Origin: Bispira polyomma
Taxonomy: Eukaryota
Assembly: GCA_965649765.1 (NCBI GenBank)
Contig: OZ287749.1
Span: 44,640,001 to 44,704,000, forward strand
Length of the DNA: 64,000 nt
Reading direction: 5' to 3'
Part shown: piece by piece, positions 41,289-60,532 of the stretch
Position numbering within the stretch: the first letter of the stretch is position 1
Layout: each line of letters starts with the position of its first letter
Position numbers and translations under genes: made by a program
The notes under the pieces: model-generated
The model's input: the letters and a program-made list of their open reading frames with translations, nothing else
Database searches by the model: none
What the model was told of the DNA's origin: nothing

Positions 41289-41355
41289 ATGGCACTGAGT
41301 AGTGCCCGTGTTACCAGAAGTACTACCATAGTGCTACTGCTGCTGGTGGCCATAT
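41289..41355 (+). CDS. Signal-peptide exon MALSSARVTRSTTIVLLLLVAI
   Basis: ttcag acceptor at 41265, caagATGG start context, hydrophobic core, gtgagt phase-1 donor in frame with the 45274 acceptor (LCQESKS/QSTC). Confidence 0.82.
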
Positions 41356-44300
41356 GTGAGTGACTTTGTTTTATTTATAGCTTTTTTTAGACCGAGTTTT
41401 CTGTCCTTGACAATGCATTGATTTTTTTTTCTGATGGTATGCATAACGAGGACAGAGTTGTTTACTATAGCAAATCGTTGTAAATGTGTAAAAACACCAA
41501 TAACAGAAAAACTATCATCTTTCCATTTAGTCTGTGGTTGTATATTGAATAATCAAATAGCTGTACACAATATTATAACTTATGGCCAACCAAAAAGTAC
41601 TTGATTAATGAAATATTATTATTTTAAAATATTGCGGTATATTTCCGTTGAACAGAATATAATAAACTGCCGTGTCAGATTTACAATGATTTGCTAATAA
41701 AAATCAAAGTATTATCGAGGACAGAAAACTTGGTCTGAGCATTTGTCTGTCTCTCTACTCCTGTTTATTGTATGTAATACAGTAGAATCTCTACTATCTG
41801 AAAACTGTTGGGGGAGCAAGATTTTGTTTGGTAAATAGGAGAGGGCATAATAAGTTTATCAAATCAAGTTTTTAGAAAATAGAAGTTTGGATAATAGAGG
41901 TTCTACTGTGCTATAGAAGTGTTGTGAATCAATGTTTTACTGTATTTTATGTGCATAAGTCAAATCATAGAGAGACTATATTTATTCATATTTTGTAATA
42001 TTTCATTAAAGGTAATAATGCACCAAATACTGTATATATGGTTAACAACACAAGGACTTGTTTATCTATTTAGTCTATCACAGGTACAATTAAAAGTAAA
42101 TTTAATATTAATTCCTAGCTAAAATAATGGGGTATTTGTTCAAACAATAAATAACATATGTATGTATATTAGCCAAAAGGTAACAAGGGCCTGTAATCGC
42201 GAAAGGGCTAAGCCTGGATTTAGACTTTACTTAAGCCTTTTGTCTTAACTTTTTTGGGGAAAAAGGCTAGGACTTTGTCTTAGACTTATCTTATTGTCTT
42301 AGAAATATCAAACAATCCGAACTCTAACCTGTCATGAATCAAACAATAAGTCATATAATTCCTGATATTTTGAATCATAAATTATCTGAAGGGGCTTAGC
42401 CAGTCTTAAGTCAAAATTTAATGAATTAAAAAAAATTTAAATTGATATTCATTTTATTTTTACTTTGTGACGTTCATATAGGCCAGAATATTTATAGAAT
42501 ATATTATTGTGTGTAAAAATATAAATAATATTGTATTATATTGTGTAATATTGTAAATAAAACAATACAAGTTAATCTCACCATAATCTTAGCTAAGTTT
42601 TTTTTTGTGAATACCATTTAAGACCAAAACTTAGCTGAAACCAAAGTCTTAGATTTAAATTGGAACTTGGCCTCAGTTTTGGCTAAGTCGAAGCCTGTTA
42701 GTGAATATGAGCCCATGGCCCATATTCACTAATGGACTTAGCCAAGTCTTAGGCTTAAAAGTACTATACTTTTGTGCTAGATTATAGCCTAAGACTTGGC
42801 TAAGTCTGTCGGTAAATACGGTCCCTGAGAAACAAGCTCCATCTTACAGAAGTGTAACTTTTCACTATAGTGTATCAATCTTCTCCGTCATACAGGTTCA
42901 ATAGTGACATAAAATGACAAAATTAAGTGAAATTTTATGCTAACCAAAATTTGCACCCATACAATACAGGAGTGGACAGCTTACAGGACAGCGATAGCGG
43001 ACAGTAACTTAAAACAACAAAGTCATCTGTAAATATAAAGTACTTATAACACTAATTTTATTGTAATACAGACTTTGCATCCAAAGTGGGTCAGATTACC
43101 TGTTAAATGGATAAAATGTGTACATTTTAAGTTACTGTCCGCAGTGGCTGTCCCATCCACTAAGCTGGCCACCCGTGTATATACCCTGTATTTTATATAA
43201 TAATAGCGCTAGGGGAGGTAGGGGACGGGGGGGTGTTCAATTTTTCCAAAAGGGGGAATTATGATTAGAGAAAGCAATGTCAATGGCGAATAGGGGTCGG
43301 AATACCCTGACTTGTGACTAAATTTCAAAGCATACAAGTTGGTGTCCAACAATAACTGTAAAGGTGATTCATGATTAAATGCAGTAAAATACATAGATCT
43401 GCTGAAATATTGCCATTCATAATCTCAAAATCTTTTAAAAAGAGAACGGCTATTGTTAGGGAGAGGGCGCTTAATACAAAGCATACAGTATGTAATGCTT
43501 ATTTAAGGTTAAGGAGAGGGGGGGGGTTAGAGGGGGTTGGGACGGCTATTATTTCTGAAGTGGGGTGAAGTGGGGTGTATTACAAAAAACATGGTATGTA
43601 ATATTTGTCACCTATTTTATAACTGGGGAGTGACATTAGTTTTTGTACCAGAGGCTTGTATTCCAACTAAATGTCACATCCCAATCTATATCATTACAGC
43701 ATGGATCCTTTTGAGTTGTAACAAGCAAAGGTATTTGGGTTGTGCAGTACCACATGTGGCTTCCTCCGTTACTCTGTTCAGTGTAAATATATTTTATTAA
43801 GTGCAAGGAGTATGTTAAATCGGAATTTCCTGAATTATTTTATAACCATAAAGTCGAAAACTATAATGCAGTTGAGAGTGGAGACACTTGTCCCAGAATA
43901 ACAGAAAACTACATAGACCCACGTCAATAAAATTATTGCATGTCTTGTCAAAACAAAAGTAAAGGTCAAAACCATGGTTTAAGCAGTACATTAATTTTAT
44001 GGAAAAATTCTGTGCAAATTAAATAACAAAATACTATTGCCTGTGATGTAATAGAACTGCACAATAAAAAGTAAAAAATAATTCAACATCTTCACGATAC
44101 ATAAAATTAGTACGTCTAAACTAATGACAGATATATCAAATTTGGTTGTTAATGCAATACTGCAATGCATGTTCACTATCTGGAAATTAAATCTGTCACT
44201 CTTGTAAAAATTGAACCATGTTTTAAGAAATGAGATCAATGTATATTTTTTTATGTAAAAAGATAATGAGATTTCAAGCAAAGAGTATTAAATGTTTTCA

Positions 44301-47300
44301 GGTCATATAATTTGCACAGGTTTTATTTCATATAGCTTCACATCTTCATAAATGGTAAATATAATAGAGAGAAGCACTAAATGATCAACTTAAAAATTGT
44401 CACAGCTCATGTCATCGAGTATGACCCATGTTACTGAAAAATAGCCTTCTTTCCCCATCTGATTTAGGGTCCCAATTACTTTTAAAAGAACTGGGGTGTT
44501 ATCGGCTTTTGACTAAGCATGTAACAATATTTTTAAAAATCGATGTATTTTTAAAGCAATGTATTGCAATATAAAATTGGAAAATTGGTATTCCGGAAAA
44601 AAAGTTTGAGGCTGTCAGAGCATACAATATATATGTCAACAAAAACAATCAAACATTAAACAATGGATACAGTCTACATTGAATAAATTAAATGTTATTT
44701 CAATTTTCATCACTTTTACAGTTTGTTTACATTCTTCCGAGATCACTGCCTCTGATTTATATTGCACAAGCATTTGCTTATAGACAGAGAAACTCATTTG
44801 ATTTTTATTTAAAACTCGCTTATATTATTGCAAATGTATTACTGGAATATTTGAATACGGCTGGACTATTGCAATATATCGCAATACAGTATTCAAGCAC
44901 AGTACTCACCCCTACTTTTTGACAATATATGATTCAGATGGGTGTAGGTTAGATGCCATATGGCACTATTGGGTGAAGGATTCCTGTGTGGTTGGTTTAA
45001 AAGCCAGAACAATACTCTCAAATTCAACTACCTCTGGTTTGATCATTTATTTCTATGAATATAATATCGTAGTTTTCATATGTAACTGATATTATGTCAT
45101 GTGTCTCTGTCCATGTCAACTTCTTCTTCGAAACTATAAATACAAAAGAGTTTGTGATTCTTTACAGGTATCTTTGGACCATGGCACCATTGATGTTTTA
45201 AAGTCACATAGTTTCAAGAAAGATGAAAATGGCTACAACTTTTATCTTAAATTATTATTTGTCTCATTTTTAGTGTGTCAAGAAAGCAAATCCCAGAGCA
45301 CTTGCAGTGAAGAGGAGTGCTTAATTGAATGTGACCATGGGTTTATGAAAGATGAACATGGTTGTCGCCTGTGCCAGTGCAACGAACAGTCCCCTTGTTC
45401 TGACAACATGTGCATGATAGAATGTGAATATGGCTTTCAGAAAGATAAAAATGGCTGCAACATGTGTGAATGTCAAGAATGCCCCAATACCATGTGTATA
45501 ATGGAATGTGAATTTGGTTTCAAGAAAGATGACAATGGCTGTGACAAGTGTGAATGTGAAGAATGCCCCAATACCATGTGCATGATGGAATGTGAATTTG
45601 GTTTCAAGAAGGATGACAATGGCTGTAACACATGTGAATGTGAACCATGTTCCAAGAAACAATGCAGAAAGTTTTGCCAATATGGATTTAAGAAAGATGA
45701 CAGCGGATGTGAAATATGTGAATGTGAAGAATGCCCCAATACCATGTGTATGATGGAATGTGAATTTGGTTTCAAGAAGGATGACAATGGCTGCAACACG
45801 TGTGAATGTGAGCCATGTTCAAACATTATGTGTGCAATGTATTGTGAGAATGGGTTCAAGAAAGATGACAATGGCTGTGACAAGTGTGAATGTGAAGAAT
45901 GCCCCACTACCATGTGTATGATGGAATGTGAACATGGTTTTAAGAAGGATCAAAATAACTGTGACACTTGTGAATGTGAAGAATGCCCCAATACCATGTG
46001 TATGATGGAATGTGAACATGGTTTTAAGAAGGATCAAAATGGCTGTGACATTTGTGAATGTGAAGAATGCTCCACTACCATGTGTATGATGGAATGTGAA
46101 CATGGTTTTAAAAAGGATCAAAATGGCTGTGACACTTGTGAATGTGAAGAATGCCCCAATACCATGTGCATGATGGAATGTGAACATGGTTTTAAGAAGG
46201 ATCAAAATGGCTGTGACAAGTGTGAATGTGAAGAATGCCTCAATACCATGTGTATGATGGAATGTGAATTTGGTTTTAAGAAGGATGACAATGGCTGTGA
46301 CAAGTGTGAATGTGAACCATGTTTAAACATTATGTGTGCTATGTATTGTGAGTACGGGTTCAAGAAAGATGGCAATGGTTGCAACAAGTGTGAATGTGAA
46401 GAATGCCCCAATACCATGTGTATGATCGAATGTGAATTTGGTTTCAAGAAAGATGGCAATGGCTGCAACACATGTGAATGTGAGCCATGTTCAAACATTA
46501 TGTGTGCAATGTATTGTGAGAATGGGTTCAAGAAAGATGACAATGGCTGTGACAAGTGTGAATGTGAAGAATGCCCCACTACCATGTGTATGATGGAATG
46601 TGAACATGGTTTTAAGAAGGATCAAAATAACTGTGACACTTGTGAATGTGAAGAATGCCCCAATACCATGTGTATGATGGAATGTGAACATGGTTTTAAG
46701 AAGGATCAAAATGGCTGTGACATTTGTGAATGTGAAGAATGCTCCACTACCATGTGTATGATGGAATGTGAACATGGTTTTAAAAAGGATCAAAATGGCT
46801 GTGACACTTGTGAATGTGAAGAATGCCCCAATACCATGTGCATGATGGAATGTGAACATGGTTTTAAGAAGGATCAAAATGGCTGTGACAAGTGTGAATG
46901 TGAAGAATGCCTCAATACCATGTGTATGATGGAATGTGAATTTGGTTTTAAGAAGGATGACAATGGCTGTGACAAGTGTGAATGTGAACCATGTTTAAAC
47001 ATTATGTGTGCTATGTATTGTGAGTACGGGTTCAAGAAAGATGGCAATGGTTGCAACAAGTGTGAATGTGAAGAATGCCCCAATACCATGTGTATGATCG
47101 AATGTGAATTTGGTTTCAAGAAAGATGGCAATGGCTGCAACACATGTGAATGTGAGCCATGTTCAAACATTATGTGTGCAATGTATTGTGAGAATGGGTT
47201 CAAGAAAGATGACAATGGCTGTGACAAGTGTGAATGTGAAGAATGCCCCACTACCATGTGTATGATGGAATGTGAACATGGTTTTAAGAAGGATCAAAAT

Positions 47301-50300
47301 AACTGTGACACTTGTGAATGTGAAGAATGCCCCAATACCATGTGTATGATGGAATGTGAACATGGTTTTAAGAAGGATCAAAATGGCTGTGACATTTGTG
47401 AATGTGAAGAATGCTCCACTACCATGTGTATGATGGAATGTGAACATGGTTTTAAAAAGGATCAAAATGGCTGTGACACTTGTGAATGTGAAGAATGCCC
47501 CAATACCATGTGCATGATGGAATGTGAACATGGTTTTAAGAAGGATCAAAATGGCTGTGACAAGTGTGAATGTGAAGAATGCCCCAATACCATGTGTATG
47601 ATGGAATGTGAATTTGGTTTTAAGAAGGATGACAATGGCTGTGACAAGTGTGAATGTGAACCATGTTTAAACATTATGTGTGCTATGTATTGTGAGTACG
47701 GGTTCAAGAAAGATGGCAATGGTTGCGACAAGTGTGAATGTGAAGAATGCCCCAATACCATGTGTATGATCGAATGTGAATTTGGTTTCAAGAAAGATGT
47801 TAATGGTTGTGACACATGTGAATGTGAACCATGTTCCAAGAAACAATGCAGAAAGTTTTGCCAATATGGATTTAAGAAAGATGACAGCGGATGTGAAATA
47901 TGTGAATGTGAAGAATGTCCCAATACCATGTGTATGATGGAATGTGAACATGGTTTTAAGAGGGATCAAAATGGCTGTGACACTTGTGAATGTGAAGAAT
48001 GCCCCAATACCATGTGTATGATGGAATGTGAATTTGGTTTCAAGAAGGATGACAATGGCTGCAACACGTGTGAATGTGAGCCATGTTCAAACATTATGTG
48101 TGCAATGTATTGTGAGAATGGGTTTAAGAAAGATGACAATGGCTGTGACAAGTGTGAATGTGAAGAATGCCCCAATACCATGTGTATGATGGAATGTGAA
48201 TTTGGTTTCAAGAAAGATGGCAATGGCTGCGACATATGTGAATGTGAGCCATGTTCAAACATTATGTGTGCAATGTATTGTGAGAATGGGTTCAAGAAAG
48301 ATGACAATGGCTGTGACAAGTGTGAATGTGAAGAATGCCCCAATACCATGTGTATGATGGAATGTGAACATGGTTTTAAGAAGGATCAAAATGGCTGTGA
48401 CACTTGTGAATGTGAAGAATGCCCCAATACCATGTGTATGATGGAATGTGAACATGGTTTTAAGAAGGATGACAATGGCTGTGACACTTGTGAATGTGAA
48501 GAATGCCCCAATACCATGTGTATGATGGAATGTGAACATGGTTTTAAGAAGGATCAAAATGGCTGTGACACTTGTGAATGTGAAGAATGCCCCAATACCA
48601 TGTGTATGATGGAATGTGAACATGGTTTTAAGAAGGATCAAAATGGCTGTGACAAGTGTGAATGTGAAGAATGCCTCAATACCATGTGTATGATGGAATG
48701 TGAATTTGGTTTTAAGAAGGATGACAATGGCTGTGACAAGTGTGAATGTGAACCATGTTTAAACATTATGTGTGCTATGTATTGTGAGTACGGGTTCAAG
48801 AAAGATGGCAATGGTTGCGACAAGTGTGAATGTGAAGAATGCCCCAATACCATGTGTATGATCGAATGTGAATTTGGTTTCAAGAAAGATGTTAATGGTT
48901 GTGACACATGTGAATGTGAACCATGTTCCAAGAAACAATGCAGAAAGTTTTGCCAATATGGATTTAAGAAAGATGACAGCGGATGTGAAATATGTGAATG
49001 TGAAGAATGTCCCAATACCATGTGTATGATGGAATGTGAACATGGTTTTAAGAGGGATCAAAATGGCTGTGACACTTGTGAATGTGAAGAATGCCCCAAT
49101 ACCATGTGTATGATGGAATGTGAATTTGGTTTCAAGAAGGATGACAATGGCTGCAACACGTGTGAATGTGAGCCATGTTCAAACATTATGTGTGCAATGT
49201 ATTGTGAGAATGGGTTTAAGAAAGATGACAATGGCTGTGACAAGTGTGAATGTGAAGAATGCCCCAATACCATGTGTATGATGGAATGTGAATTTGGTTT
49301 CAAGAAAGATGGCAATGGCTGCGACATATGTGAATGTGAGCCATGTTCAAACATTATGTGTGCAATGTATTGTGAGAATGGGTTCAAGAAAGATGACAAT
49401 GGCTGTGACAAGTGTGAATGTGAAGAATGCCCCAATACCATGTGTATGATGGAATGTGAACATGGTTTTAAGAAGGATCAAAATGGCTGTGACACTTGTG
49501 AATGTGAAGAATGCCCCAATACCATGTGTATGATGGAATGTGAACATGGTTTTAAGAAGGATGACAATGGCTGTGACACTTGTGAATGTGAAGAATGCCC
49601 CAATACCATGTGTATGATGGAATGTGAACATGGTTTTAAGAAGGATCAAAATGGCTGTGACACTTGTGAATGTGAAGAATGCCCCAATACCATGTGTATG
49701 ATGGAATGTGAACATGGTTTTAAGAAGGATCAAAATGGCTGTGACAAGTGTGAATGTGAAGAATGCCTCAATACCATGTGTATGATGGAATGTGAATTTG
49801 GTTTTAAGAAGGATGACAATGGCTGTGACAAGTGTGAATGTGAACCATGTTTAAACATTATGTGTGCTATGTATTGTGAGTACGGGTTCAAGAAAGATGG
49901 CAATGGTTGCGACAAGTGTGAATGTGAAGAATGCCCCAATACCATGTGTATGATCGAATGTGAATTTGGTTTCAAGAAAGATGTTAATGGTTGCGACACA
50001 TGTGAATGTGAACCATGTTCCAAGAAACAATGCAGAAAGTTTTGCCAATATGGATTTAAGAAAGATGACAGCGGATGTGAAATATGTGAATGTGAAGAAT
50101 GTCCCAATACCATGTGTATGATGGAATGTGAACATGGTTTTAAGAGGGATCAAAATGGCTGTGACACTTGTGAATGTGAAGAATGCCCCAATACCATGTG
50201 TATGATGGAATGTGAATTTGGTTTCAAGAAGGATGACAATGGCTGCAACACGTGTGAATGTGAGCCATGTTCAAACATTATGTGTGCAATGTATTGTGAG

Positions 50301-53300
50301 AATGGGTTTAAGAAAGATGACAATGGCTGTGACAAGTGTGAATGTGAAGAATGCCCCAATGCCATATGTATGATGGAATGTGAATTTGGTTTCAAGAAAG
50401 ATGGCAATGGCTGCGACACATGTGAATGTGAGCCATGTTCAAACATTATGTGTGCTATGTACTGTGAGAATGGGTTCAAGAAAGATGACAATGGCTGTGA
50501 CAAGTGTGAATGTGAAGAATGCCCCAATACCATGTGTATGATGGAATGTGAACATGGTTTTAAGAAGGATCAAAATGGCTGTGACAAGTGTGAATGTGAA
50601 GAATGCCCCAATACCATGTGTATGATGGAATGTGAATTTGGTTTTAAGAAGGATGACAATGGCTGTGACAAGTGTGAATGTGAACCATGTTCAAACATTA
50701 TGTGTGCTATGTATTGTGAGTACGGGTTCAAGAAAGATGGCAATGGTTGCGACAAGTGTGAATGTGAAGAATGCCCCAATACCATGTGTATGATGGAATG
50801 TGAATTTGGTTTCAAGAAAGATGGCAAAGGCTGCAACACATGTGAATGTGAACCATGTTCCAAAAAACAATGCAGAAAGTATTGCCAATATGGATTTAAG
50901 AAAGATGACAGCGGATGTGAAATATGTGAATGTGAAGAATGCCCCAATACCATGTGTATGATGGAATGTGAATTTGGTTTCAAGAAGGATGACAATGGCT
51001 GTGACACATGTGAATGTGAGCCATGTTCAAACATTATGTGTGCGATGTATTGTGAAAATGGGTTCAAGAAAGATGACAATGGCTGTGACAAGTGTGAATG
51101 TGAAGAATGCCCAAACACCATGTGTATGATGGAATGTGAATTTGGTTTCAAGAAGGATCAAAATGGCTGTGACACGTGTGAATGTGAAGAATGCCCCAAT
51201 ACCATGTGCATGATGGAATGTGAATTTGGTTTCAAGAAGAATGTTAATGGTTGCAACACATGTGAATGTGAACCATGTTCCAAAAAACAATGCAGAAAGT
51301 ATTGCCAATATGGATTTAAGAAAGATGACAGTGGATGTGAAATATGTGAATGTGAAGAATGCCCCAATACCATGTGTATGATGGAATGTGAACATGGTTT
51401 TAAGAAGGATCAAAATAGCTGTGACACGTGTGAATGTGAGCCATGTTCAAACATTATGTGTGCAATGTATTGTGAGAATGGGTTCAAGAAAGATGGCAAT
51501 GGCTGCGACATGTGTGAATGTGAAGAATGTCCCAATACCATGTGTATGATGGAATGTGAATTTGGTTTTAGGAAGGATGGCAATGGCTGTAACATGTGTG
51601 AATGTGAAGAATGCCCCAATACCATGTGTATGATGGAATGTGAATTTGGTTTCAAGAAAGATGGCAATGGCTGCGACATATGTGAATGTGAGCCATGTTC
51701 AAACATTATGTGTGCAATGTATTGTGAGAATGGGTTCAAGAAAGATGACAATGGCTGTGACAAGTGTGAATGTGAAGAATGCCCCAATACCATGTGTATG
51801 ATCGAATGTGAATTTGGTTTCAAGAAGGATGACAATGGCTGCGACATTTGTGAATGTGAAGAATGCGCCAATACCATGTGTATGATAGAATGTGAACATG
51901 GATTCAAGAAGGATGTACACGGTTGTGACCACTGTGAATGTGCTGACTTCGCTTGTCCACCTCTGCAGTGCTTTATAAACTGTGAACATGGGATGAAAAA
52001 GGTACTTATATATCATTAAAATGGAGAAAATGATATATGACATGCTAAGCATAGTATTTATTGTTGATAAAACTTTTTAATCAAATTTTATATTATGTTA
52101 TGTCACTTGTTACAATAATGACACTAATGGTTCGAACTGTGGTTTTCACATTTTATCTGATGCCTATATCTGACCAAAAAAATTAGCTGAAACTTGCCGT
52201 ATGTGGGTATTCATAAACCATTTTAAACCAAGATAGAGTGATTAAAAGCCTTTTTTCGAAGGAGCGACTGAATTTTGAAAATAGTTAATATTCATGATTA
52301 TTCCAGCTATTTCTGAAATCTTTAATAAATGCCAAATATCTCCAAAACAAAGTGAGATAGAGGTACTTCAGACTTATTTTAGACCCACCATGGTATAAAG
52401 ATTCTATTAATTAAAAATGTCTTAATCTATTATTTTTGGTATTCATTAACCCGTAATTTCTGTCACTTTCTATTATTCTTTTTTGTATTAATATGATATA
52501 TTGTATTGATATACCATCAAAAAAGAGAAAAACATTCTAATTTTGAAATATAAAGGTACACAAAAAAGCTTTAAAATACAACCAGATCAAATGATACAAA
52601 AGTCAATTTTCAGTGGTTGTAATTGATGCATTGTAGGATGACAAGGGCTGCTTGACCTGTGACTGTTTAGAGAGTCCTGTCTCTTGTTCTGACATTGAGT
52701 GCATGATGGAATGTCCATTCGGTCAGAGAAGAGATGATAATGACTGCAGTCTGTGTTCTTGTAAAGAAAGTGCTTGTGAGGTAACTACAAAATGTTAATT
52801 GTATTGTACTCAAATTTATACTCACTGAATTTGGCTACCTTCATCTGTTATTCAAAGAGCTAATTATCCTTTTCTTGGCAGCCCAAGTACAGCCAACCAG
52901 CCCTAGTAATTTCCATTCCTTTAACTGAAGAGACAGAGATTCAGGGATAAATAATTTATCAATGTTCCCAAGGTTATTTAGCCTGCCACCGAGGATAGGA
53001 CCTGATAATTGAGGACCTCTATTTTAAGTGGTCATCTGAGCCAGTCTGTATCTGTCTGTACCTTATCTCTCAATGCTGGGATTGAACCTAGGTCCACTGG
53101 ATTTCCAAGTGACTGTGTAACTCATTAGAGCACAGTGGAAGATCAATTAAAGAAAACAACAGTTTTCTTCTATAAGCTAGTGATTGTTAATTTAATTAAA
53201 GCCATTGATAGATTGAAATTTTATTTGTTATTATCTAACCACAGTTTTACACAGCTTCTTAATCACATTTGTCTTATTTTAACACAGTGTAATTCATGCA

Positions 53301-56300
53301 AAGTCTATGATATATATTTTAGGGAAAAGTTTGTGCATCAGGTAAGAGGCTTTGGTAAGAGGTTTGTGCCTCAGGTAAAAGCCATTGATATATTGAAAAT
53401 ATATTGAAATTTTATTTGTTATTATCTAACCACAGTTTTACACAGCTTCTTGATCACATTTGTCTTATTTTAACACAGTGTAATCCATGCAAAGTCTATG
53501 ATATATATTCTAGGGAAAAGTTTGTGCCTCAGGTAAGAGGTGTGAAACCAGGAAGTTACCATGTGATAAAACCATGTGCCCTGAGGAAGCTCTCTGTGTC
53601 ACAGAACCAGGTAGGAACAGGCAACATGGAGGGCCTGTGTCAATGGTCTTAAACTCGTACTTAAATGTCACATTAAAAGATTTGCTGATTAATGGAAGTA
53701 GCCTAGACGTTTTAATTCATATTAATGAAGCTTTCAGTAAGAAACCCATATATGCAGAATGTTTATCATACATGAATACAGCCGGACATATTTTGAGATT
53801 TTTAAGTTTTCAATAGGCATTTATATAGTGTGATTACATTGAATCAACAAAGGTACTTGTTCTTCAAGGAGATATAGTCCTACATCATAGCATACATTCT
53901 CATCAAAAAGTAGTTGTCGTTACATCAACGCAAGCTAGTCCAGCTTCTTTGGTTTTTCCTAAATATATAATTACAGAGCCTGGATTTATCTTGTGATGTT
54001 TTGTCAACTATATCATGTATTGTACAATTTCCCCACAACCACCATTTAGTGGTACAACATGTATTTAAAAAGATTGGTATTCATCAATTTTATTGGCTAA
54101 TAATATGGTGAAAAGCATTCTGATTGCCTGGGACTGAGAGTAGATGTCCCAAAAGGGTTGTGGATGATACTTGAGAATCTTTTCTTTGTTCCTTTGTTGA
54201 ACTTGATCTTATTTGACTTTTAGGTGTTTAATCTCTATATAATCTAATGGGAGATTGACAGATTATTTAGTAAAAGTGTTCTATGGTAAAATCTATATGA
54301 TAATCATATGATCATTAGATAAAGACACATTTTTACCCCACAGCCTATATATATATATATAGGTTATGGGGTATTGTTTTTACCTGAAAGGGCAGGCTGG
54401 TAGTGGCTGCTAAAATTTGATCAACCTAGTTCTAGAAAACCGTGAGGCAGAGGAAGTACATATTTAGTCCAAATATTCCTTTGGGGTTATCGGTGTGTAA
54501 CAACATTATGGTCAGATTTCACTTAAAGGCTATGGTTGTTTTGGCATCTCTGATGCTATTTTTTTTTCATGTGGTCAAAACTTTTAAAAAAAGCTTACTT
54601 ATCAAAGTCATTTGCTTTTATTCTTCCAGCAAGTAGTCGCTGCTCTAAAGACACAGATACTGGTGTGTGCAGTAGCAATGGGTTGTCAGTGACGCGTTGG
54701 TTTTATGATAGGAAGAAACAAGAGTGTTCTACATTCAGCTACAGTGGCTGTGGAGGCAATAACAACAACTTCATAACCTCAGATGAGTGTCAGCTTGTTT
54801 GTGAAGGTACCAGCTTCATACAAGTCAACAAAATGTACTTTGTAGTATAATAGCCCTGTGGGCAATGTGTTTCTCCAAAAGGAGGTGGGGGTAGTGGGGT
54901 CTATTATTTCAGAATAGAATGTTGATACATGTGGGTGGGGAAGTATGTTATCCCTAGTAATCATCATGGCATCATCATTTGACTCCATAACTACTATGTC
55001 ATGAAAGATTATCAATGGCGTAGAAATGATTTCCTAGAATTCAAAAGTGAAAAGAAAGAAAATTTGGTAATGACATAGTCTGACACGACACGGCTGTGTG
55101 TCAGCGATTCTGATTGGCCAAAAGCCTTGGTAAAATACTGCATATACCCAATGTCATTGGCTGTTCCATCAGTCCCGCTGCAAACATAATTAAGATGGAA
55201 CAGCCTATGTTTAATTAAGTTTATGACCAAAATATATGATTACTGAAGGGTGTTATTCCTATAAAGACAAATACTGTTTTATTTATTTCTATGTGTTGTG
55301 TATTTTACACCATAAGTAACTGCACAGCTTTCTAGTATCATCCTAACATATATAATTTTATCATTATTGTGATAGATTTTCAGCTTATGCTTATTATTTA
55401 TATCCAAAATCTAAAGATAAGTCACTGCTGTTTACTTTTTATTGTAGCTTTAATCCAAGCTTTATAGTTTTATAACAGTTTTTTTTGTTTTTCTGTCCAG
55501 AAAGTAGGAGACTGACCAAGATCTCTGTCTCAATGAAGTTACTGCATCAAATTCCACCTGTAGAATATGTACACGACGTCTTCCTGAGGTAAGTAATATA
55601 CAAAACTACAACATAAATCAACAGAAAATAAAATGGTCGGTTTTATTAAATAATCAAATATAAATAAAAATGGCCATTTTGAAAACTTCATTTTATGGTT
55701 AAATCATGCTGAACTAAGTAGTAAAATTTTATTTTCTTAAAAGTTAATTATCAAAATGTCCAGACCGCTGTATTTGGGCAACATACAAAAACGTCTAAGC
55801 CTTGCACATTATAAAATCAGTTGATGTCCATATGCGCAAAGAACTACCCATAGGGTTTCAGAAAATGTGTTTTAGTCATTTGGATGGATATGTTATGTTA
55901 ATGAGCAAGTGCTAGATTTTCCGTATTATAGCACATGAAGTGTAGCAATAACAAATAGAGGATTTTTTTAAATTTAACTTCATTTAATCAGAGATGCTTA
56001 GATAGCATAGTTGTAACAATCTTGCCTGCCACCTCTCCCATCTTGGGTTGCAATCTCGGCCATGGTGTTTATGTTAGAAAGTTGGCAAAATACTTGCTTA
56101 AGGCTGGCGGTTTGCCGAGCGAAAAACCTTGACCGGCTACCTAGCTTGGATGGCCTGCACCAGTGAACTGCCCAGCTTTATATGACATGAAGCATGTTGA
56201 AAGCGACATTAAACCCAAAACTAACTAAATAACTATCAAATAAAATACAAAAATGTTTTTAAATACATGGCATTACATTATTTATCTTGTATTTTTCAGT

Positions 56301-59300
56301 TTCTTCCAAAATACACTGAGTCAGTGGATGTTTCTGGAGAAGAACTACTTAATGAATATGCATATGACCCCATTGACCTCAGCACACAGGAAGAGGAAGC
56401 AAGCTGAAGGTGGATTTCAGGAGGTCATTGTCACATTAGATGTTATGGAGGGAGGTCAAACGACACCAACAGAAGCAGTTTCTTTCCTCACAGATAAGGT
56501 AACTAGAACTGTATAGTTTTATTAGAACACATGTTTTCACAAAAGCAGAGGTGGTTTAAATTATAACTACAAGTATATGCCTATTGTTTTAAAGAAGTTC
56601 ACTGGGATATTAATTTCAGTTTTTGTCCATTTCTTTCAAAATTTATACATACCTTTTAAATATAATTCTTTTGTTGGGAATTAATCTTCACCGCTCAACC
56701 CATTATAAAAAATACTTAAATACAGCTAATTTGATGTTTAAAAAATTGCTATCTTTGCACATTGATCTACTCAGTTACTGAGCTTCAACTCGGATCTCAA
56801 AATACTTTGTATCAGTAGACAAGATTAACTTTTTTACATCTTATTAGTGTCCATGCAATGTCACATTAAGCCAGTGACCCAAAAATTCTTATCTTGATTG
56901 CATTCAGGTTGCTGTCCTAATCCTAAAAACTTAGGCCAGTGGCTAGGCCTTTACACTATCCCATACATCAAATCTACTGCCTCTGGGCCATCAAGCCTAT
57001 ATTGATATTACTACCTGTTTATTTAATTCTTTGCTTGTCTTTTTATACATATACAGATTCAGACCAAGACTTCCACATTTTACTACAAAACCTACCTGGT
57101 TACTGTGGATCCTCAGAGCTTGTCCCTTGTAAGTTACTATGATGACACAGAGAAGCCTGTTCCCACTACCTTCAAACCCGAGAAAGGCATGGAGCAGTAT
57201 CAGATTATCATTGTGATTGTGGCCATAGCTTTAGCCCTGGCCTTTATTGCAGCAGTTATTGCTGTGGTAAGTTCAATTTGAAGTTTTGTAAACAAACCTT
57301 AAGAGCAAAGGCTAGTGGTCTCTGTGGCTTAGTAGTTATGACGTTCAACTTTGGAGCATGTGGTCCCAGGATCGATGCTTACTGCAGGTCTGAAGATTAT
57401 TGTTTTGGGCAAGATGTATAAATGTGGTACCTAGCTGGTTGCCAATGGGCATTTTGTTTGTGCAACATGTGACATAATGGCTGGTATGCTCCATTAGGGA
57501 ACTGAGATTGAACAATGAAGAAGTAGACAAACCCATTGGAGGTGATATATATATTAGATTATAAACTATACATTTAGTTGTAGACTTTTGACACATTGGA
57601 AGCCTGGGGTCAGTTCAGACAAAGTAAAATTTAGAAAATATGGTGAAATATTTCTGGAGTTTGTCTTGTTTTACACAAAAGTATTAAATGGTTTTAATTT
57701 ACAGTATATATTATCTAAACGCAGAGAGAGCAAGATATTATTTGTGTCACAGAAGGTTCCTAAAATAGAAGAGGCATTCTAATAAACTTGGTAGCATGAA
57801 ATTGAATTTATAAGTGATTGTGGTATAATTAAGTCAATTTAAAGTCACATAGGTAACACCAAAGATATCCTTTGAGTATTAGACATCAGGTAGATTTTAA
57901 AAGACAATTTTATATGCTGTTTCAATATCTCAAATTATTTGATATATATATACGACAAAAAACACCTGAACAGTGAAACATCTTTTAGACATCTTTTGTG
58001 TGACAAATTTCTTGTGCTTTCCAGTTTGTTTGCCTGAGGCACAAAAAGAGTGGTGGTTATGAAGTGGACTACAAACAGACATCCCAGAATGGCAAGGTAA
58101 GATATCTAAATGGCTGGTATTTTGTATTTCATTTAAAGAGAAAACAAAGTAACCCCAAACTCAAGTACTTAACTCAAATAAAGGCAATTTAGATGTCCAT
58201 TACAGAGGTAATAACCCACCCTACAATGACCATGTACTTTAAACAGACTTTTACTCCTTTTCGTGTCATAGAGTAAGTAGTATAAAATAATACATTGTTG
58301 ATATATTCACTGTAGCCAAAGTTATGGTGAGTTTAGCTAAAGTTTCGGTGAATATCTTTCTTCAAGAAATATACCATATGTGACGTATATGTAGATGTTT
58401 GACACACATACACAACAGGATTTTTCTACGGTGAGTGTTGTGTCAATATTTTGTCCTCTGTCTAACCATGTTATGTATTTGTGGTCATTGGCTTTTTTTT
58501 CTCTTCTGTAAATATTTCACTGTGTATTTAAAGTAAACAGAGTCTGTGCCAAGTCTTTTTCCTTTGTTGTGAGACAATAGAAAGTGTCAGAAATATGAGA
58601 TAAAGTAATTGTGTACATTACATATAGTTTTTTATATAAGTGCATGTGCTTATATTGTCACGCACACCCACAGAAAACAATGTTAAAAATAAGACCAAAA
58701 CAAATTCTTCTCCGTACTTTGTGCTGCAATAAATTTACTCAGTATAGCATAACATGTACTTGAATAGGGCGTCACAAACAGTACTCTACTTATGTATGCT
58801 GAGTATATTTATTGGATTTATTTATATTGTGTAATTGACCTTCTACCTCTGCAGTCATGGGTTTGATTCTCGCCCATGTGGCATGTATGTGGGAAAGTTG
58901 GTAGTAGACTTGCTGAAGGTTGATGGTTTGCAGTAAAGAAAATCTTCCAAACATCCTGTACTGTTTTCCTCCACAAATAAACTGCCCATTGCAATTTAAT
59001 ATTCATTTATTAAAAGCCATGTTAAATCAATAGGTGAATAAATAAGGTAAAGTGTTTTATGTTTTCCTCATATATGTGTCGTACAATAAGTTTGAATCTA
59101 TTGAACATTGAAATTTTAAATAAATGTGATATAAATAATACTTTTTGTTGACAAGAAAAGGTTCAGAGTTAAACTATTATGACATCATGTATGACATAGT
59201 GAAGATAATAATCAACCTTCTCCACTTTGTATGGAAAAATTAATCACAAATTCACCAAATATCCAAAGTATATCACCTATAACTGCCAGTAATTCTAAGC

Positions 59301-59565
59301 TAAATTATATTACTTTTAGCAATAAAATATATATTTTATCATAACAAGCGTAGTTTTTAATCATTTTGCATTCAAGTTTGTCCTAATTAATTGATTTTAG
59401 CAAGGTTTTAGTGTGATGAATTTTAGTGTCAAAATTCAGGTTAATAACTATATTAACATACATGTATTTCTTTTGTAGGTGCCTTCATTTGACAATGCTG
59501 TATATGACCAGCCACCATATGTAGTTTATCCTTCAGACACAAAGGAGAAAATTCCACTGGAATAA
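41289..59565 (+). CDS. Giant type-I membrane protein, ~2622 aa: signal peptide + 81 antistasin-like domains + FOLN-like + Kunitz + SEA-like + TM + FDNAVY tail; join(41289..41355,45274..52001,52637..52780,53514..53610,54630..54806,55501..55588,56300..56498,57057..57266,58025..58096,59479..59565)
   Basis: All nine introns are GT-AG with matching phases (1,0,0,1,1,2,0,0,0); 7869 nt, open to TAA. An antistasin unit split by the 52002-52636 intron is completed across it (CPPLQCFINCEHGMKK/DDKGCLTCDC). TM segment IIIVIVAIALALAFIAAVIAV/FVCL is followed by RHKK. Confidence 0.88.
41780..41908. mobile_element. Tc1/mariner-type MITE
   Basis: ta|cagtagaatctctactatc ... gataatagaggttctactg. Confidence 0.75.
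42187..42826. mobile_element. Two adjacent Harbinger-type MITEs (~42187-42714 and ~42717-42826)
   Basis: gggcctgtaatc..gaatatgagccc then ggcccatattcac..gtaaatacggtccc; the second has a perfect 21-bp inverted repeat gacttagccaagtcttaggct. Confidence 0.65.
45274..52001 (+). CDS. 6728-nt exon encoding 79 complete antistasin-like (PF02822-type) domains plus the start of an 80th
   Basis: Within the 2306-aa ORF; unit C-x4-C-x3-C-xxGFKKDxNG-C-x2-C-x-C; tttttag acceptor and AAG|gtactt donor. Confidence 0.95.
45480..51947 (+). repeat. Coding tandem array: 77 x 84-bp units with 672-bp (8-unit) and 1092-bp (13-unit) higher-order repeats
   Basis: Unit starts at 45480 and 51864 are exactly 76x84 apart; shadow ORFs recur at 45819/46491/47163 (672) and 47546/48638/49730 (1092). 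Confidence 0.95.
52637..52780 (+). CDS. Exon: end of antistasin unit 80 and unit 81
   Basis: DDKGCLTCDCLESPVSCSDIECMMECPFGQRRDDNDCSLCSCKESACE, 144 nt, ttgtag/gtaact. Confidence 0.93.
52830..53138 (-). mobile_element. tRNA-SINE in intron
   Basis: Minus-strand ggttcaatccc B box and core shared with the 34250 and 61235 copies. Confidence 0.65.
53198..53540 (+). repeat. Tandem duplication of intron end, acceptor and first ~27 nt of the 53514 exon
   Basis: aaagccattgata...tagggaaaagtttgtgc(a/c)tcaggtaagagg occurs twice, ~190 bp apart. Confidence 0.9.
53514..53610 (+). CDS. Exon: follistatin-N-like Cys module
   Basis: (CE)GKVCASGKRCETRKLPCDKTMCPEEALCVTEP, 97 nt, phase 0-1; domain label is by Cys spacing only. 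Confidence 0.8.
54630..54806 (+). CDS. Exon: BPTI/Kunitz domain
   Basis: CSKDTDTGVCSSNGLSVTRWFYDRKKQECSTFSYSGCGGNNNNFITSDECQLVC; FxYxGCxGNxNNF signature; symmetric phase 1-1 exon. Confidence 0.95.
55501..55588 (+). CDS. Exon: stalk part 1
   Basis: Long pyrimidine tract ending ccag, ESRRLTKISVSMKLLHQIPPVEYVHDVFL, gtaagt donor. Confidence 0.85.
56300..56498 (+). CDS. Exon: stalk part 2 with RKRK
   Basis: tttttcag acceptor, FFQNTLSQWMFLEKNYLMNMHMTPLTSAHRKRKQAEGGFQEVIVTLDVMEGGQTTPTEAVSFLTDK, gtaact donor. Confidence 0.87.
57057..57266 (+). CDS. Exon: juxtamembrane region and transmembrane helix
   Basis: IQTKTSTFYYKTYLVTVDPQSLSLVSYYDDTEKPVPTTFKPEKGMEQYQIIIVIVAIALALAFIAAVIAV, gtaagt donor. Confidence 0.9.
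58025..58096 (+). CDS. Exon: TM end and cytoplasmic juxtamembrane segment
   Basis: FVCLRHKKSGGYEVDYKQTSQNGK, tttccag/gtaaga. Confidence 0.88.
59479..59565 (+). CDS. Last coding exon with FDNAVY motif
   Basis: VPSFDNAVYDQPPYVVYPSDTKEKIPLE*; ttttgtag acceptor; AATAAA downstream near 60011 and 60464. Confidence 0.88.
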   Translation: MPSFDNAVYDQPPYVVYPSDTKEKIPLE

Positions 59566-60532
59566 ACATCTATGATCTGTTGACATGTGTCTTCCCTTGA
59601 GCAGCAAGAGCTACAAAGAGACACCTATAAGTGTATATAGTGTGGTACATTATAGAATGTGACTTTTTAGAACAGTTTCTTTCATTGATGGAATTATCAG
59701 GCACTTTAAGAAGCTAATATATTTTTTATTCATATTGTTTTTTGTATGATTTTTAATATGATGTATAAATTAAATGAAACAAAAGACAGGTACAGTCTGT
59801 TTTGTTTTTGTAGGGTTTTTTAAATTTTATAAAATTAATGTTTATATTTGCAATATAAAATATTTGCAAACTTTTTATATGTGATATTGACAAGTCATTT
59901 TCTTTTTAAATATACTTAAAAAAAATTTGTACTTAAAAACATAAAATAGAACAGTTATAAGTATGCATTCTGCTATCAATTCGGTTAACCCAGTGATAAT
60001 TTATATTTATAATAAACTTTATTTTTATTTATTTGCATTTCAAAACTAAGCATTTCTTTCTTATTATGTATTCATTATTTCTAAACCAATTGCATAGGTT
60101 TATAATTTGAAGAGATCCATCAAAAATTAATAACTTTACTGTGATAACTATTCCTAAACTGCTCAAGTGTTTTTGTACTTCTCATGTCATACAGCAAAAT
60201 TCAGATGGAATTCTCACTTTGTGTAACACAATTCTAGAAGTGTGCAGATTTTATCTTTGCACATAACATGTGCTAATACATTAGCCTTTTCAGTTATTCA
60301 CAGATATATCATATATTGTAATAAATTGAAATCTCAACATAGAATGCAGGTAAATATTATAACCGGTGTATTTTGGAGGCTCTGTGATTTGCTATTAATT
60401 TTTAATCTATACTGTATTGTTGTTTTTATAATTTATAAATTTGTAAAAAATATACATGTGTAGTAATAAAATTTTGTAGATAAGTAACTGTGCTTAATTA
60501 CAAACAATTTTGGTGGTGTCATAACTTGTTCT

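What the first reader, a model, noticed from the sequence alone, without database searches (positions are those of the whole stretch)
41289..59565. Giant membrane-tethered protease-inhibitor array: 81 antistasin domains + Kunitz + SEA-like stalk + TM + endocytic-type tail
Seen: a phase-consistent 10-exon model of ~2622 aa with signal peptide, 81 six-Cys antistasin-type units, a FOLN-like module, a Kunitz domain, a stalk, a TM helix and a ~48-aa tail. Known: leech antistasin, guamerin, hirustasin and piguamerin are small secreted inhibitors, Hydra antistasin has about six repeats, and membrane-bound CRIM1 has four. Inference: ~80 inhibitor heads on a type-I receptor could form a cell-surface protease shield or a capture-and-internalise scavenger. 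I do not recognise this architecture as a described gene family. The ORF track hides the membrane anchor, so automated annotation may split or truncate the gene.
Basis: partly seen in the sequence, partly recalled or inferred. Interest (0 to 1): 0.92.

Follow-up and report, generated by a model that had tools for sequence, protein, structure and literature searches.

The report
Mucin-style giant tethered protease-inhibitor array
An invertebrate gene strings 81 leech-type protease-inhibitor knots plus one Kunitz domain onto a stalk that carries a conserved cutting site, a membrane anchor and a short tail. It is built like a membrane mucin but made of inhibitor heads, belongs to an unnamed family found in several animals, and has not yet been seen as RNA in this species.

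Summary
All splice sites are GT-AG and all phases fit. There are 79 whole six-Cys antistasin units in one 6,728-nt exon, one unit split by an intron and one more in exon 3, which makes 81. After them come a small Cys-rich linker, a Kunitz domain, a stalk, a transmembrane helix and a 52-residue tail.

No RNA run of this species was available. Comparative evidence for one gene is strong:
- An orthologue on a 3.6-Mb contig of another species keeps all 10 exons, phases and splice sites, with 79 units. Omega over the small exons is about 0.11, synonymous sites are saturated and the introns cannot be aligned.
- An intron-free, transcript-like contig from a third taxon (P0024) joins array end, Kunitz, stalk, TM and tail in one ORF.

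New points:
- The stalk folds like a SEA domain (weak support).
- It carries a conserved multibasic, furin-type site in the loop where SEA domains are cut.
- The Kunitz P1 is not basic.
- The tail has no canonical endocytic motif.
- Interior units are homogenised within each species, yet both keep about 80.

The architecture has shorter, unnamed relatives (at most about 30 units) and I found no paper describing it. The scan also noted this array in two sibling findings on the same DNA. Function is inferred only.

The parts
41289..41355 (+). Exon 1: start codon and signal-peptide-like N-terminus (basic N-region, hydrophobic core TTIVLLLLVAI); ends in phase 1
   Evidence: The orthologue keeps the same Kozak context (caagATGGCA), the same donor (ATAT|GTGAGT) and the same phase.
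45274..52001 (+). Exon 2: giant exon of 6,728 nt with 79 whole 28-aa six-Cys antistasin units and the first half of unit 80. P1 residues are Met 53, Ala 18, Arg 6, Leu 1, Ile 1. Higher-order repeats of 8 and 13 units.
   Evidence: PDB alignment to antistasin and bdellastasin. Third codon positions differ twice as often as first or second.
52637..52780 (+). Exon 3: second half of the split unit 80 (DDKGCLTCDC), then unit 81
   Evidence: (PF02822 E 4.7e-6). 81% identical to the orthologue, omega 0.05.
53514..53610 (+). Exon 4: small Cys-rich linker with a follistatin-N-like C-x4-C-x2-G-x2-C pattern
   Evidence: Conserved in the orthologue (66%) and in P0024. No Pfam FOLN hit.
54630..54806 (+). 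Exon 5: Kunitz/BPTI domain with six Cys, P1 Ser and a 3-residue insertion in the binding loop
   Evidence: PF00014 E 1.2e-17. Sequence. Loop gaps against other Kunitz domains.
55501..55588 (+). Exon 6: first strand and start of helix 1 of the SEA-like stalk
   Evidence: Maps to strand 1 of the P0024 model.
56300..56498 (+). Exon 7: core of the stalk (helix 1, strand 2, cleavage loop, strand 3, helix 2)
   Evidence: Single copy in the own genome. Relatives in five other taxa. Omega 0.08.
56388..56399 (+). Multibasic site RKRK within HRKRKQ, a candidate proprotein-convertase (furin-type) cut site in the strand2-strand3 loop
   Evidence: Conserved as HRKRKQ, HRRRRQ, HRSRRQ, RAKRS and RMRRD in relatives. 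Lies in the b2-b3 loop of the model.
57057..57266 (+). Exon 8: last strand of the stalk, short Thr/Pro linker, and TM helix from 57204
   Evidence: 75% identical to the orthologue. Abuts exon 7 in P0024.
58025..58096 (+). Exon 9: end of the TM helix (FVCL), stop-transfer RHKK, conserved GGYEVDY
   Evidence: 89% identical over 18 residues in the orthologue. GGY is kept in P0024.
59479..59565 (+). Exon 10: Tyr-rich end of the tail (YDQPPYVVYP), C-terminus KIPLE, stop TAA overlapping an AATAAA
   Evidence: 71% identical to the orthologue, which ends KVPLE.

Best explanation
This is one gene for a type-I membrane protein laid out like a membrane mucin: signal peptide, a very long tandem array in one exon, a SEA-like juxtamembrane domain, a TM helix and a short tail. 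The array is made of 81 compact three-disulfide antistasin-type knots instead of glycosylated Pro/Thr/Ser repeats.

Each knot corresponds to the C-terminal, protease-binding subdomain of leech inhibitors such as bdellastasin and guamerin, and presents a canonical loop with P1 just after Cys2. There are three head classes: Met (Leu in the orthologue), which points to elastase- or chymotrypsin-like targets; Ala; and Arg/Lys, which points to trypsin-like targets.

Most likely mechanism: the protein is made in the ER and cut at the conserved multibasic site in the strand2-strand3 loop of the stalk by a furin-type convertase. It then reaches the surface as a non-covalent heterodimer, as Notch, GPR126 and (by autoproteolysis) MUC1 do. 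At the surface the very acidic, roughly 80-head brush binds and blocks serine proteases of several specificities. Force or unfolding can release it as a soluble polyvalent inhibitor.

Shown: the sequence anatomy, domain membership, conservation, exon structure and position of the site. Inferred: inhibition, targets, cleavage, surface location and shedding.
For: - Gene model: GT-AG sites and consistent phases; one inhibitor unit is split by the exon 2/3 intron.
- Orthologue L015: all 10 exons collinear, same lengths or within 9 nt (exon 1 is 58 vs 67 nt), same phases, 77+2 units. pN 0.156, pS 0.666, omega about 0.11; eight introns give no blastn hit and intron 1 only a 38-bp island and a 19-bp hit. 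Apart from scattered weak, mostly non-collinear tblastx hits, the conserved islands are exactly the exons, plus that one 38-bp intronic island.
- P0024, an intron-free 1,849-nt contig, joins array, unit, linker, Kunitz, stalk, TM and tail. The junctions E2/E3, E3/E4, E7/E8 and E8/E9 abut.
- Kunitz and stalk exons are also adjacent on L013 and L014.
- Units: Pfam E 1e-80. They align to antistasin 1skz and bdellastasin 1c9p, with P1 at the residue after Cys2. No unit has lost a Cys in either species.
- The same mix of head classes is kept in both species although interior units are homogenised within each species: best match 98% within versus 85% across.
- Stalk: beta-alpha-beta-beta-alpha-beta model, pLDDT 72, with the multibasic site in the b2-b3 loop. 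Best extracellular fold matches are MUC16 SEA5 (Z 8.0) and Gpr126 SEA (Z 7.8). The nearest cluster by language-model features is mucin-16-like SEA at 0.84.
- Precedent: furin or autoproteolytic cutting in exactly this loop, with the halves staying together (PMC6954182).
Against: - No RNA of this species was available, so splicing, expression and tissue are unknown.
- No biochemical data exist for any member of this family.
- The units lack the 4-Cys N-terminal subdomain of the leech inhibitors. Antistasin-like domains in CRIM1 have no proven inhibitor role (my knowledge).
- P1 of the multibasic site is Lys in this species and its orthologue (RKRK), which furin cuts poorly. Cutting after RKR would leave His at P4.
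- SEA membership fails by sequence: no Pfam hit and no GSVVV motif. The fold Z values lie in the range that generic ferredoxin-like folds reach, and Foldseek found nothing below 1e-3.
- The structure was predicted on the relative P0024, not on the window's own joined stalk.
- A net charge of about -304 could point to a non-inhibitor role.
Confidence: 0.55

Rival explanations
1. The knots are structural, not inhibitory. The protein would be a non-glycan surface coat, matrix or cuticle component, or a cation-binding (for example calcium) scaffold, whose acidic disulfide-rich beads serve as a spacer, barrier or mineral-interacting polymer.
For: Net charge about -304, 21% Cys and no N-glycosylation sequon in 2,242 residues. 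A mucin-like layout. Antistasin-like domains occur in proteins with non-inhibitor roles, such as a leech cocoon protein, and a role in segment-polarity signalling has been suggested (PMC7851590). Antistasin transcripts have been linked to shell formation in oyster larvae (PMC5824581).
Against: The binding-loop region is where the units differ in a patterned way (P1 Met/Ala/Arg with matched P1' and P2'), while the scaffold is invariant. The same classes persist in the orthologue. The units are closest to the protease-contacting subdomain of bdellastasin. A Kunitz domain is attached.
Confidence: 0.2
2. It is a capture-and-internalise scavenger receptor. Proteases bound to the heads would be endocytosed through tail motifs.
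For: The tail is conserved (89% over 18 residues of exon 9, 71% for exon 10) and Tyr-rich. Related, shorter proteins P0012 and P0014 carry a true GY(E/D)NP(S/N)Y motif.
Against: The window's tail has no YxxPhi (GGYEVD, YKQT, YDQP and YPSD all fail; YVVY has Tyr at the Phi position), no dileucine and no NPxY (it reads QPPY). A cut in the stalk would uncouple the array from the tail.
Confidence: 0.1
3. The membrane anchor is only a biosynthetic device. The working product would be a secreted giant inhibitor released constitutively at the multibasic site, or made from a transcript that ends just after the giant exon.
For: A conserved multibasic site. Reading through the exon 2 donor meets a stop after five codons, overlapping an ATTAAA. 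The orthologue also stops after four codons.
Against: TM and tail are under purifying selection (omega 0.11-0.25) and are kept in P0024. SEA-type cuts normally leave the halves attached (PMC6954182). Stops and A/T-rich hexamers just inside an AT-rich intron are expected by chance.
Confidence: 0.12
4. It is not one gene, or not a real array: two neighbouring genes, a pseudogene, or a mis-assembled repeat.
For: No RNA evidence in this species. Repeat arrays are hard to assemble. The public runs that hold the stretch may be the assembly's own source.
Against: An inhibitor unit is split by the intron. The orthologue has the same 10 exons and 79 units on an independent assembly. P0024 joins the parts. 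There are no stops or lost Cys in 2,242 codons. Contigs of two samples match exons 6-9 and their introns without a difference.
Confidence: 0.03

Closest known systems
Leech antistasin-type inhibitors (antistasin, hirustasin, bdellastasin, guamerin) and Hydra antistasin
   Same: The same six-Cys unit (PF02822). It aligns to antistasin 1skz and bdellastasin 1c9p with P1 after Cys2. CEHGFKKDDNGC is nearly identical to bdellastasin. P1 Met as in guamerin (my knowledge). Hydra antistasin is likewise built of 25-26-aa six-Cys repeats, six of them (PMC7851590).
   Different: Those are small secreted proteins with 1-6 units. The leech ones add a 4-Cys N-terminal subdomain per head. Here there are 81 bare units, a Kunitz domain, a stalk, a TM helix and a tail.
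Membrane mucins (MUC1, MUC16, MUC17) and other SEA-stalk proteins cut in the b2-b3 loop (Notch, GPR126)
   Same: Signal peptide, huge tandem array in one exon, ferredoxin-like juxtamembrane domain with a cleavage site in the strand2-strand3 loop, TM helix and short tail. Fold match to MUC16 SEA5 (Z 8.0) and Gpr126 SEA (Z 7.8). Furin cutting of this loop is known for Notch2 and GPR126 (PMC6954182).
   Different: The repeats are disulfide knots with no Pro/Thr/Ser tracts and no N-glycosylation sequons. There is no Pfam SEA hit and no GSVVV motif.
Membrane-anchored Kunitz inhibitors HAI-1/HAI-2 (SPINT1/2)
   Same: Type-I membrane proteins that present canonical serine-protease inhibitor domains at the cell surface and are shed (my knowledge).
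   Different: They have one or two Kunitz heads with basic P1, and MANSC or LDLa domains. They have no antistasin array and no SEA-like stalk. Here the Kunitz P1 is Ser with an enlarged loop.
CRIM1
   Same: A type-I membrane protein that contains antistasin-like domains (PMC11922885 listed; domain make-up from my knowledge).
   Different: CRIM1 has an IGFBP-like N-terminus and six VWC repeats with only four antistasin-like domains. None of those other domains is present here.
Unnamed database relatives: P0024 (same subfamily); P0012, P0014, P0022, P0028 and P0050 (sister layouts)
   Same: Antistasin units plus small Cys-rich linkers, Kunitz, an alpha/beta stalk, a TM helix and a short tail, on transcript-like contigs. 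P0024 shares the stalk sequence and the multibasic site.
   Different: The sister layouts have 6-12 units with a Cys-rich linker after most units and 1-2 Kunitz domains. P0012 and P0014 add a thyroglobulin-1 domain and a GSIM(V/A)DF motif in place of the multibasic site. Their stalks show no profile similarity to the window's. None carries a name.

Membership tests
Antistasin family (Pfam PF02822) | 26-aa unit with six Cys in the spacing C-x4-C-x3-C-x10-C-x2-C-x-C, scoring above the curated cut-off | tested here: met
   E 1.2e-80 and 9.3e-86, 10-11 stretches per ~300 aa, cut-off 21.2 bits. 79 of 79 units keep the pattern.
Antistasin family (Pfam PF02822) | Sequence relation to solved inhibitors, with the reactive-site P1 right after the second Cys | tested here: met
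   Matches 1skz antistasin (E 8.5e-6) and 1c9p bdellastasin (E 1.5e-4). In the alignment, antistasin's CRVHC falls on the window's CMIEC. Which residue is P1 in the leech proteins comes from my knowledge.
Leech-type complete antistasin inhibitor domain (10 Cys) | A 4-Cys N-terminal subdomain in front of each six-Cys subdomain | tested here: not met
   Units follow each other with a 2-residue spacer, so there is no room for a further subdomain. This is the Hydra-type repeat (PMC7851590).
Antistasin family | Inhibition of a serine protease | not testable with these tools
   Needs recombinant protein and enzyme assays.
Kunitz/BPTI (Pfam PF00014) | About 53-aa domain with six Cys, above the cut-off | tested here: met
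   E 1.2e-17, 64.3 bits against a cut-off of 21.
Kunitz/BPTI trypsin-type inhibitors | Basic P1 after the second Cys and a binding loop of standard length | tested here: not met
   P1 is Ser, with 3 extra residues before RWFY. The orthologue has Asn, P0024 Tyr and L013 Ala at P1.
SEA domain (Pfam PF01390) | Sequence match to the family profile | tested here: not met
   No SEA hit at E up to 10 on the contiguous stalk of P0024, nor at E up to 1 on the window's stalk exons 7 and 8 (exon 6 was not scanned).
SEA domain | Ferredoxin-like beta-alpha-beta-beta-alpha-beta fold next to the membrane | tested here: inconclusive
   The model of P0024:258-392 has that topology, pLDDT 72, pTM 0.61. VIA Z is 8.0 (MUC16 SEA5) and 7.8 (Gpr126 SEA), but many unrelated ferredoxin-like folds score Z 7-8. 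Foldseek gave nothing below 1e-3.
SEA domain | Cleavage site in the strand2-strand3 loop (GSVVV autoproteolysis, or a furin site as in Notch and GPR126) | tested here: inconclusive
   No GSVVV. A conserved R-x-(K/R)-(R/K) site lies in that loop in six taxa. Actual cutting was not tested.
Membrane mucins | Pro/Thr/Ser-rich, heavily O-glycosylated tandem repeats | tested here: not met
   The repeats are 21% Cys and acidic, with 0 N-x-S/T sequons.
CRIM1 | IGFBP-like N-terminus and VWC repeats | tested here: not met
   Pfam found only a weak VWC hit below the cut-off (15.9 vs 27.6 bits) on exon 3, and no IGFBP domain.
Follistatin-N (FOLN) module | Profile match to PF09289 | tested here: not met
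   No hit on exon 4 or on the contiguous P0024. Only the C-x4-C-x2-G-x2-C pattern is shared.
Endocytic tail motifs | YxxPhi, [DE]xxxL[LI] or NPxY in the cytoplasmic tail | tested here: not met
   Read directly from exons 9 and 10: none is present, and QPPY stands where P0012 and P0014 have NPxY.

The most novel reading that the evidence does not exclude
A previously undescribed class of animal surface protein: a 'proteinaceous mucin'. Its brush is about 80 protease-inhibitor knots of three specificities. It is cut by a convertase in a SEA-like stalk, so it sits on the cell as a force-releasable, polyvalent anti-protease shield. Selection would hold the array near 80 units and keep a fixed mix of head classes, even though the units are continually homogenised within each species.
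Probability: 0.35. Interest if true: 0.8.

Novelty: new variant of a known kind. Interest (0 to 1): 0.64.

Why it matters
If the reading holds, this is by far the largest compound protease inhibitor I could find. It has 81 heads, against about 30 in the next largest database hit and 1-6 in the characterised antistasins. It would also be the first case of a mucin-type layout (giant one-exon array, cleavable SEA-like stalk, TM helix) built from inhibitor domains.

It offers a natural system for three questions:
- How tandem coding arrays keep their length and their mix of variants under concerted evolution. Two species have 81 and 79 units, although only the first unit is one-to-one between them.
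- How multivalency and mixed specificity work in protease control at a cell surface.
- How SEA-type stalks swap autoproteolysis for convertase sites.

The units are also a ready panel of minimal 28-residue inhibitor scaffolds with natural P1 variants.

Tried and rejected
The three holders are DNA contigs with introns, so nothing can be said about splicing or expression in this species.
- The search for homologous proteins with the C-terminal part of P0014 returned only P0014 itself.
- Searching the own genome with the C-termini of P0014 and P0012 found no orthologue. The stalk exons have no paralogue.
Two scans of the metagenome contigs with single proteins found nothing.
- Profile-profile comparison of the window-type stalk with the P0012/P0014 stalk gave no similarity. 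I therefore treat those proteins as sister layouts, not proven homologues of the stalk.
- Foldseek against PDB and the ESM Atlas shape search gave only generic alpha/beta hits.
- Literature searches on antistasin with Kunitz plus transmembrane, SEA domain or furin, and on the phrase 'antistasin-like domains', found no description of this architecture. One search was badly framed and useless.
- Rejected: the in-frame ATG at 45099 as the start. Its hydrophobic stretch lies about 50 residues in, the segment upstream of the acceptor is a decayed unit, and the orthologue supports exon 1.
- Rejected: the minus-strand 127-128-aa ORFs across the array. They are periodic by-products of the repeat, and the codon-position bias fits the + frame.

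Full report
**1. What is in the sequence**

The + strand carries an open frame of 2,306 codons at 45099-52019. Tandem Repeats Finder reports a period of 84 nt with 77.8 copies at 79% matches and no indels. Two pieces of about 300 aa score E 1.2e-80 and 9.3e-86 against Pfam Antistasin PF02822, with 10-11 stretches each.

| Exon | Coordinates |
|---|---|
| 1 | 41289-41355 |
| 2 | 45274-52001 |
| 3 | 52637-52780 |
| 4 | 53514-53610 |
| 5 | 54630-54806 |
| 6 | 55501-55588 |
| 7 | 56300-56498 |
| 8 | 57057-57266 |
| 9 | 58025-58096 |
| 10 | 59479-59565 |

All acceptors are AG with pyrimidine tracts, all donors are GT, and the phases chain without a break. The total is 7,869 nt, that is 2,622 codons plus TAA.

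Exon 2 holds 79 whole 28-residue units. Unit 80 is split by the exon 2/3 intron (…CEHGMKK | DDKGCLTCDC), and unit 81 lies in exon 3, so the count of 81 is right. All 79 whole units keep the six Cys, Gly13 and Phe14. Differences among units fall twice as often on third codon positions. The repeated 127-128-aa ORFs on the minus strand are by-products of the period.

Everything below was done exon by exon or on natural contiguous relatives.

**2. The non-repeat parts**

- Exon 5 is a Kunitz domain (PF00014, E 1.2e-17). Its P1 is Ser and its binding loop is three residues longer than in other Kunitz domains. Relatives have Asn, Tyr or Ala at P1. It is therefore not a trypsin-type head.
- Exon 4 is a small Cys-rich linker with a follistatin-N-like C-x4-C-x2-G-x2-C pattern but no Pfam hit.
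- Exon 8 ends in a 21-residue hydrophobic run (Kyte-Doolittle mean 3.4 over 19 residues). It continues as FVCL and is followed by RHKK in exon 9, which is a type-I topology.
- Exon 1 has a basic N-region and the core TTIVLLLLVAI.
- The 52-residue tail has no YxxPhi, dileucine or NPxY motif. 'Endocytic-type' is not supported.

**3. Is it one gene?**

No RNA run of this organism holds the stretch. The three holders are DNA contigs that include the introns. They match 55107-58499 without a single difference in two samples, but they may be the assembly's own source. The evidence is therefore comparative.

*The orthologue.* A search of 1.84 billion representative proteins with exon 7 alone found four exon-sized ORFs from other taxa at 41-75% identity. 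The closest lies on a 3.6-Mb contig. The 26-kb locus L015 around it carries all ten exons in the same order.
- AG and GT sit at the homologous positions and the phases are the same. The lengths are equal or differ by at most 9 nt (exon 1 is 58 vs 67 nt).
- Even exon 1 keeps caagATGGCA and the donor ATAT|GTGAGT.
- Over the nine small exons pN is 0.156 and pS is 0.666, giving omega of about 0.11. Eight introns give no blastn hit, and intron 1 gives only a 38-bp island and a 19-bp hit.
- A tblastx/blastn sweep shows that, apart from scattered weak and mostly non-collinear tblastx hits, the conserved islands are exactly the ten exons plus that one 38-bp island in intron 1.

*A transcript-like contig from a third taxon.* P0024 is a 486-aa ORF on an intron-free 1,849-nt JGI contig, open to the contig's 5' edge. 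It reads array end, exon-3-like unit, Cys-rich linker, Kunitz, stalk, TM and tail in one frame. The window's junctions E2/E3, E3/E4, E7/E8 and E8/E9 map to directly abutting residues.

*Short scaffolds.* Small metagenome scaffolds of further taxa keep Kunitz, stalk exon and last stalk exon in order (L013), or pairs of them (L012, L014).

I put the one-gene model at about 0.9.

**4. The units**

They align to solved antistasin (1skz, E 8.5e-6) and bdellastasin (1c9p, E 1.5e-4). The known reactive-site residue falls on the residue after Cys2 (the P1 identities of the leech proteins are from my knowledge).

| P1 residue | Window | Orthologue |
|---|---|---|
| Met | 53 | 32 |
| Leu | 1 | 22 |
| Ala | 18 | 15 |
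| Arg | 6 | 5 |
| Lys | 0 | 2 |
| Ile | 1 | 1 |

(Counts.) Each class has its own matched P1'/P2' residues: MME, AMY and RKF/RKY.

The units lack the 4-Cys N-terminal subdomain of the leech inhibitors. They are the Hydra-type six-Cys repeat (PMC7851590). In bdellastasin the protease contacts are made by this C-terminal subdomain (my knowledge).

The array is extremely acidic, with a net charge of about -304, and has no N-glycosylation sequon.

**5. Array evolution**

Similarity peaks at lags of 8 and 13 units confirm higher-order repeats. This agrees with the sibling note s1-596260.

Interior units are homogenised within each species. The mean best match is 98.3% within the window's array against 85.3% to the orthologue's. 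Only the first unit is clearly one-to-one, and unit 2 only marginally so. Yet the two arrays have 81 and 79 units and a similar mix of head classes. That suggests selection on length and composition, but it rests on two species only.

**6. The stalk**

The contiguous stalk of P0024, with the window's and other taxa's exons as alignment rows, folds as beta-alpha-beta-beta-alpha-beta (pLDDT 72, pTM 0.61). Evidence on its fold:
- VIA-align against 48,161 chains puts SorCS2 (Z 8.1), MUC16 SEA5 (8.0), Gpr126 SEA (7.8) and the Trop2 C-domain (7.5) on top. Many unrelated ferredoxin-like folds score only slightly lower.
- Foldseek gives nothing below 1e-3.
- Pfam gives no SEA hit.
- The nearest cluster by language-model features is mucin-16-like SEA at 0.84, below the level that tool calls reliable.

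'SEA-like' is a fair description of the fold. Family membership is not shown.

The new point is a multibasic site. It reads HRKRKQ here and in the orthologue, and HRRRRQ, HRSRRQ, RAKRS and RMRRD in four other taxa. It falls in the strand2-strand3 loop of the model. This is the loop cut by autoproteolysis in MUC1 and by furin in Notch2 and human GPR126, after which the two halves stay together until force separates them (PMC6954182).

Caveat: P1 is Lys in this species and its orthologue, which furin disfavours.

**7. Best reading and rivals**

The best-supported reading is a mucin-style surface protein that is convertase-processed, non-covalently tethered and sheddable, and whose brush is a polyvalent, multi-specificity serine-protease inhibitor. 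The anatomy and conservation are shown. Inhibition, cleavage and location are inferred.

Rivals:
- A structural or cation-binding coat.
The tail lacks the motifs, and a stalk cut would uncouple the array from the tail.
- A chiefly secreted product.
- A two-gene or artefact reading, which the comparative data make unlikely.

**8. What is known**

The literature I could search describes antistasin-like proteins as small secreted proteins with one to a few units: six in Hydra, up to 11 in Naegleria (PMC7851590 and PMC12482156). I found no paper describing an antistasin-Kunitz-stalk-TM family.

The databases do hold unnamed relatives of the layout, on transcript-like contigs:
- P0024, of the same subfamily.
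- P0022, P0028 and P0050 (598-729 aa).
- P0012 and P0014 (1,333-1,411 aa), with a thyroglobulin-1 domain, a GSIM(V/A)DF motif in the stalk and an APP-like GY(E/D)NP(S/N)Y tail.

Among all hits of 385-3,923 aa, the largest arrays have about 30 units.

Caveat: the first protein search failed to return the orthologue's 2,144-aa ORF, although that ORF is on record. Blanks from that tool are therefore weak evidence.

I could not name the organism.

**9. Verdict**

- Observation: confirmed.
- Interpretation: partly supported, and refined by the cleavable stalk, the non-basic Kunitz P1, the lack of an endocytic motif, and membership in an unnamed family.
- Novelty: a new variant of known kinds (compound inhibitors, membrane mucins). 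It is extreme in scale and conserved between species.
- Interest: 0.64.

Noticed in passing
L008:3725-7510 (ENA ERZ26695794 contig): P0001, a 1,261-aa single ORF with about 30 six-Cys antistasin units, lies beside a dUTPase and a run of small same-strand ORFs. The context looks more like a large virus or a protist than an animal gene.
   Followed up: no
own genome G000: C13:10591771-10645575; C9:6134786-6139826; C2:12.90, 17.91, 48.07, 91.66 Mb; C9:7.99, 21.75, 49.28 Mb: Several other multi-exon antistasin loci exist. The C13 locus has a 652-aa open frame plus more than 20 further exon hits. None carries a copy of the window's stalk exons.
   Followed up: partly
window 42721-42758: A 38-bp island in intron 1 is 87% identical to the collinear place in the orthologue's intron 1 (L015 8236-8273). 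It is the only clear collinear conserved non-exon sequence in the locus and could be a regulatory element.
   Followed up: no
window 45200-45272: Just upstream of the exon 2 acceptor, the array's frame reads SHSFKKDENGYNF. This is a decayed antistasin unit that is now intronic, and it explains why the mechanical ORF starts at 45099.
   Followed up: partly
P0012 and P0014 (L007, L006; both from run SRR3624128): These two sister proteins carry a thyroglobulin-1 domain, a stalk with GSIM(V/A)DF (which resembles the SEA autoproteolysis motif) and a tail with GY(E/D)NP(S/N)Y like the YENPTY of the amyloid precursor protein. P0012 ends in VPLE, as the window's protein ends in IPLE.
   Followed up: partly
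window 52700-53100, 54300-54500, 55100-55300, 57700-57900: Depth spikes of hundreds to tens of thousands in the public DNA contigs mark interspersed repeats inside introns 3, 4, 5 and 8.
   Followed up: no
window 52002-52019 and 59561-59566: Reading through the exon 2 donor meets a stop after five codons, overlapping an ATTAAA. The final stop codon overlaps an AATAAA. Either could be a polyadenylation signal or chance in AT-rich DNA.
   Followed up: no
tool behaviour: The word-indexed protein search did not return the orthologue's 2,144-aa ORF, although that ORF is on record in the contig index. Statements that nothing larger exists are lower bounds.
   Followed up: no
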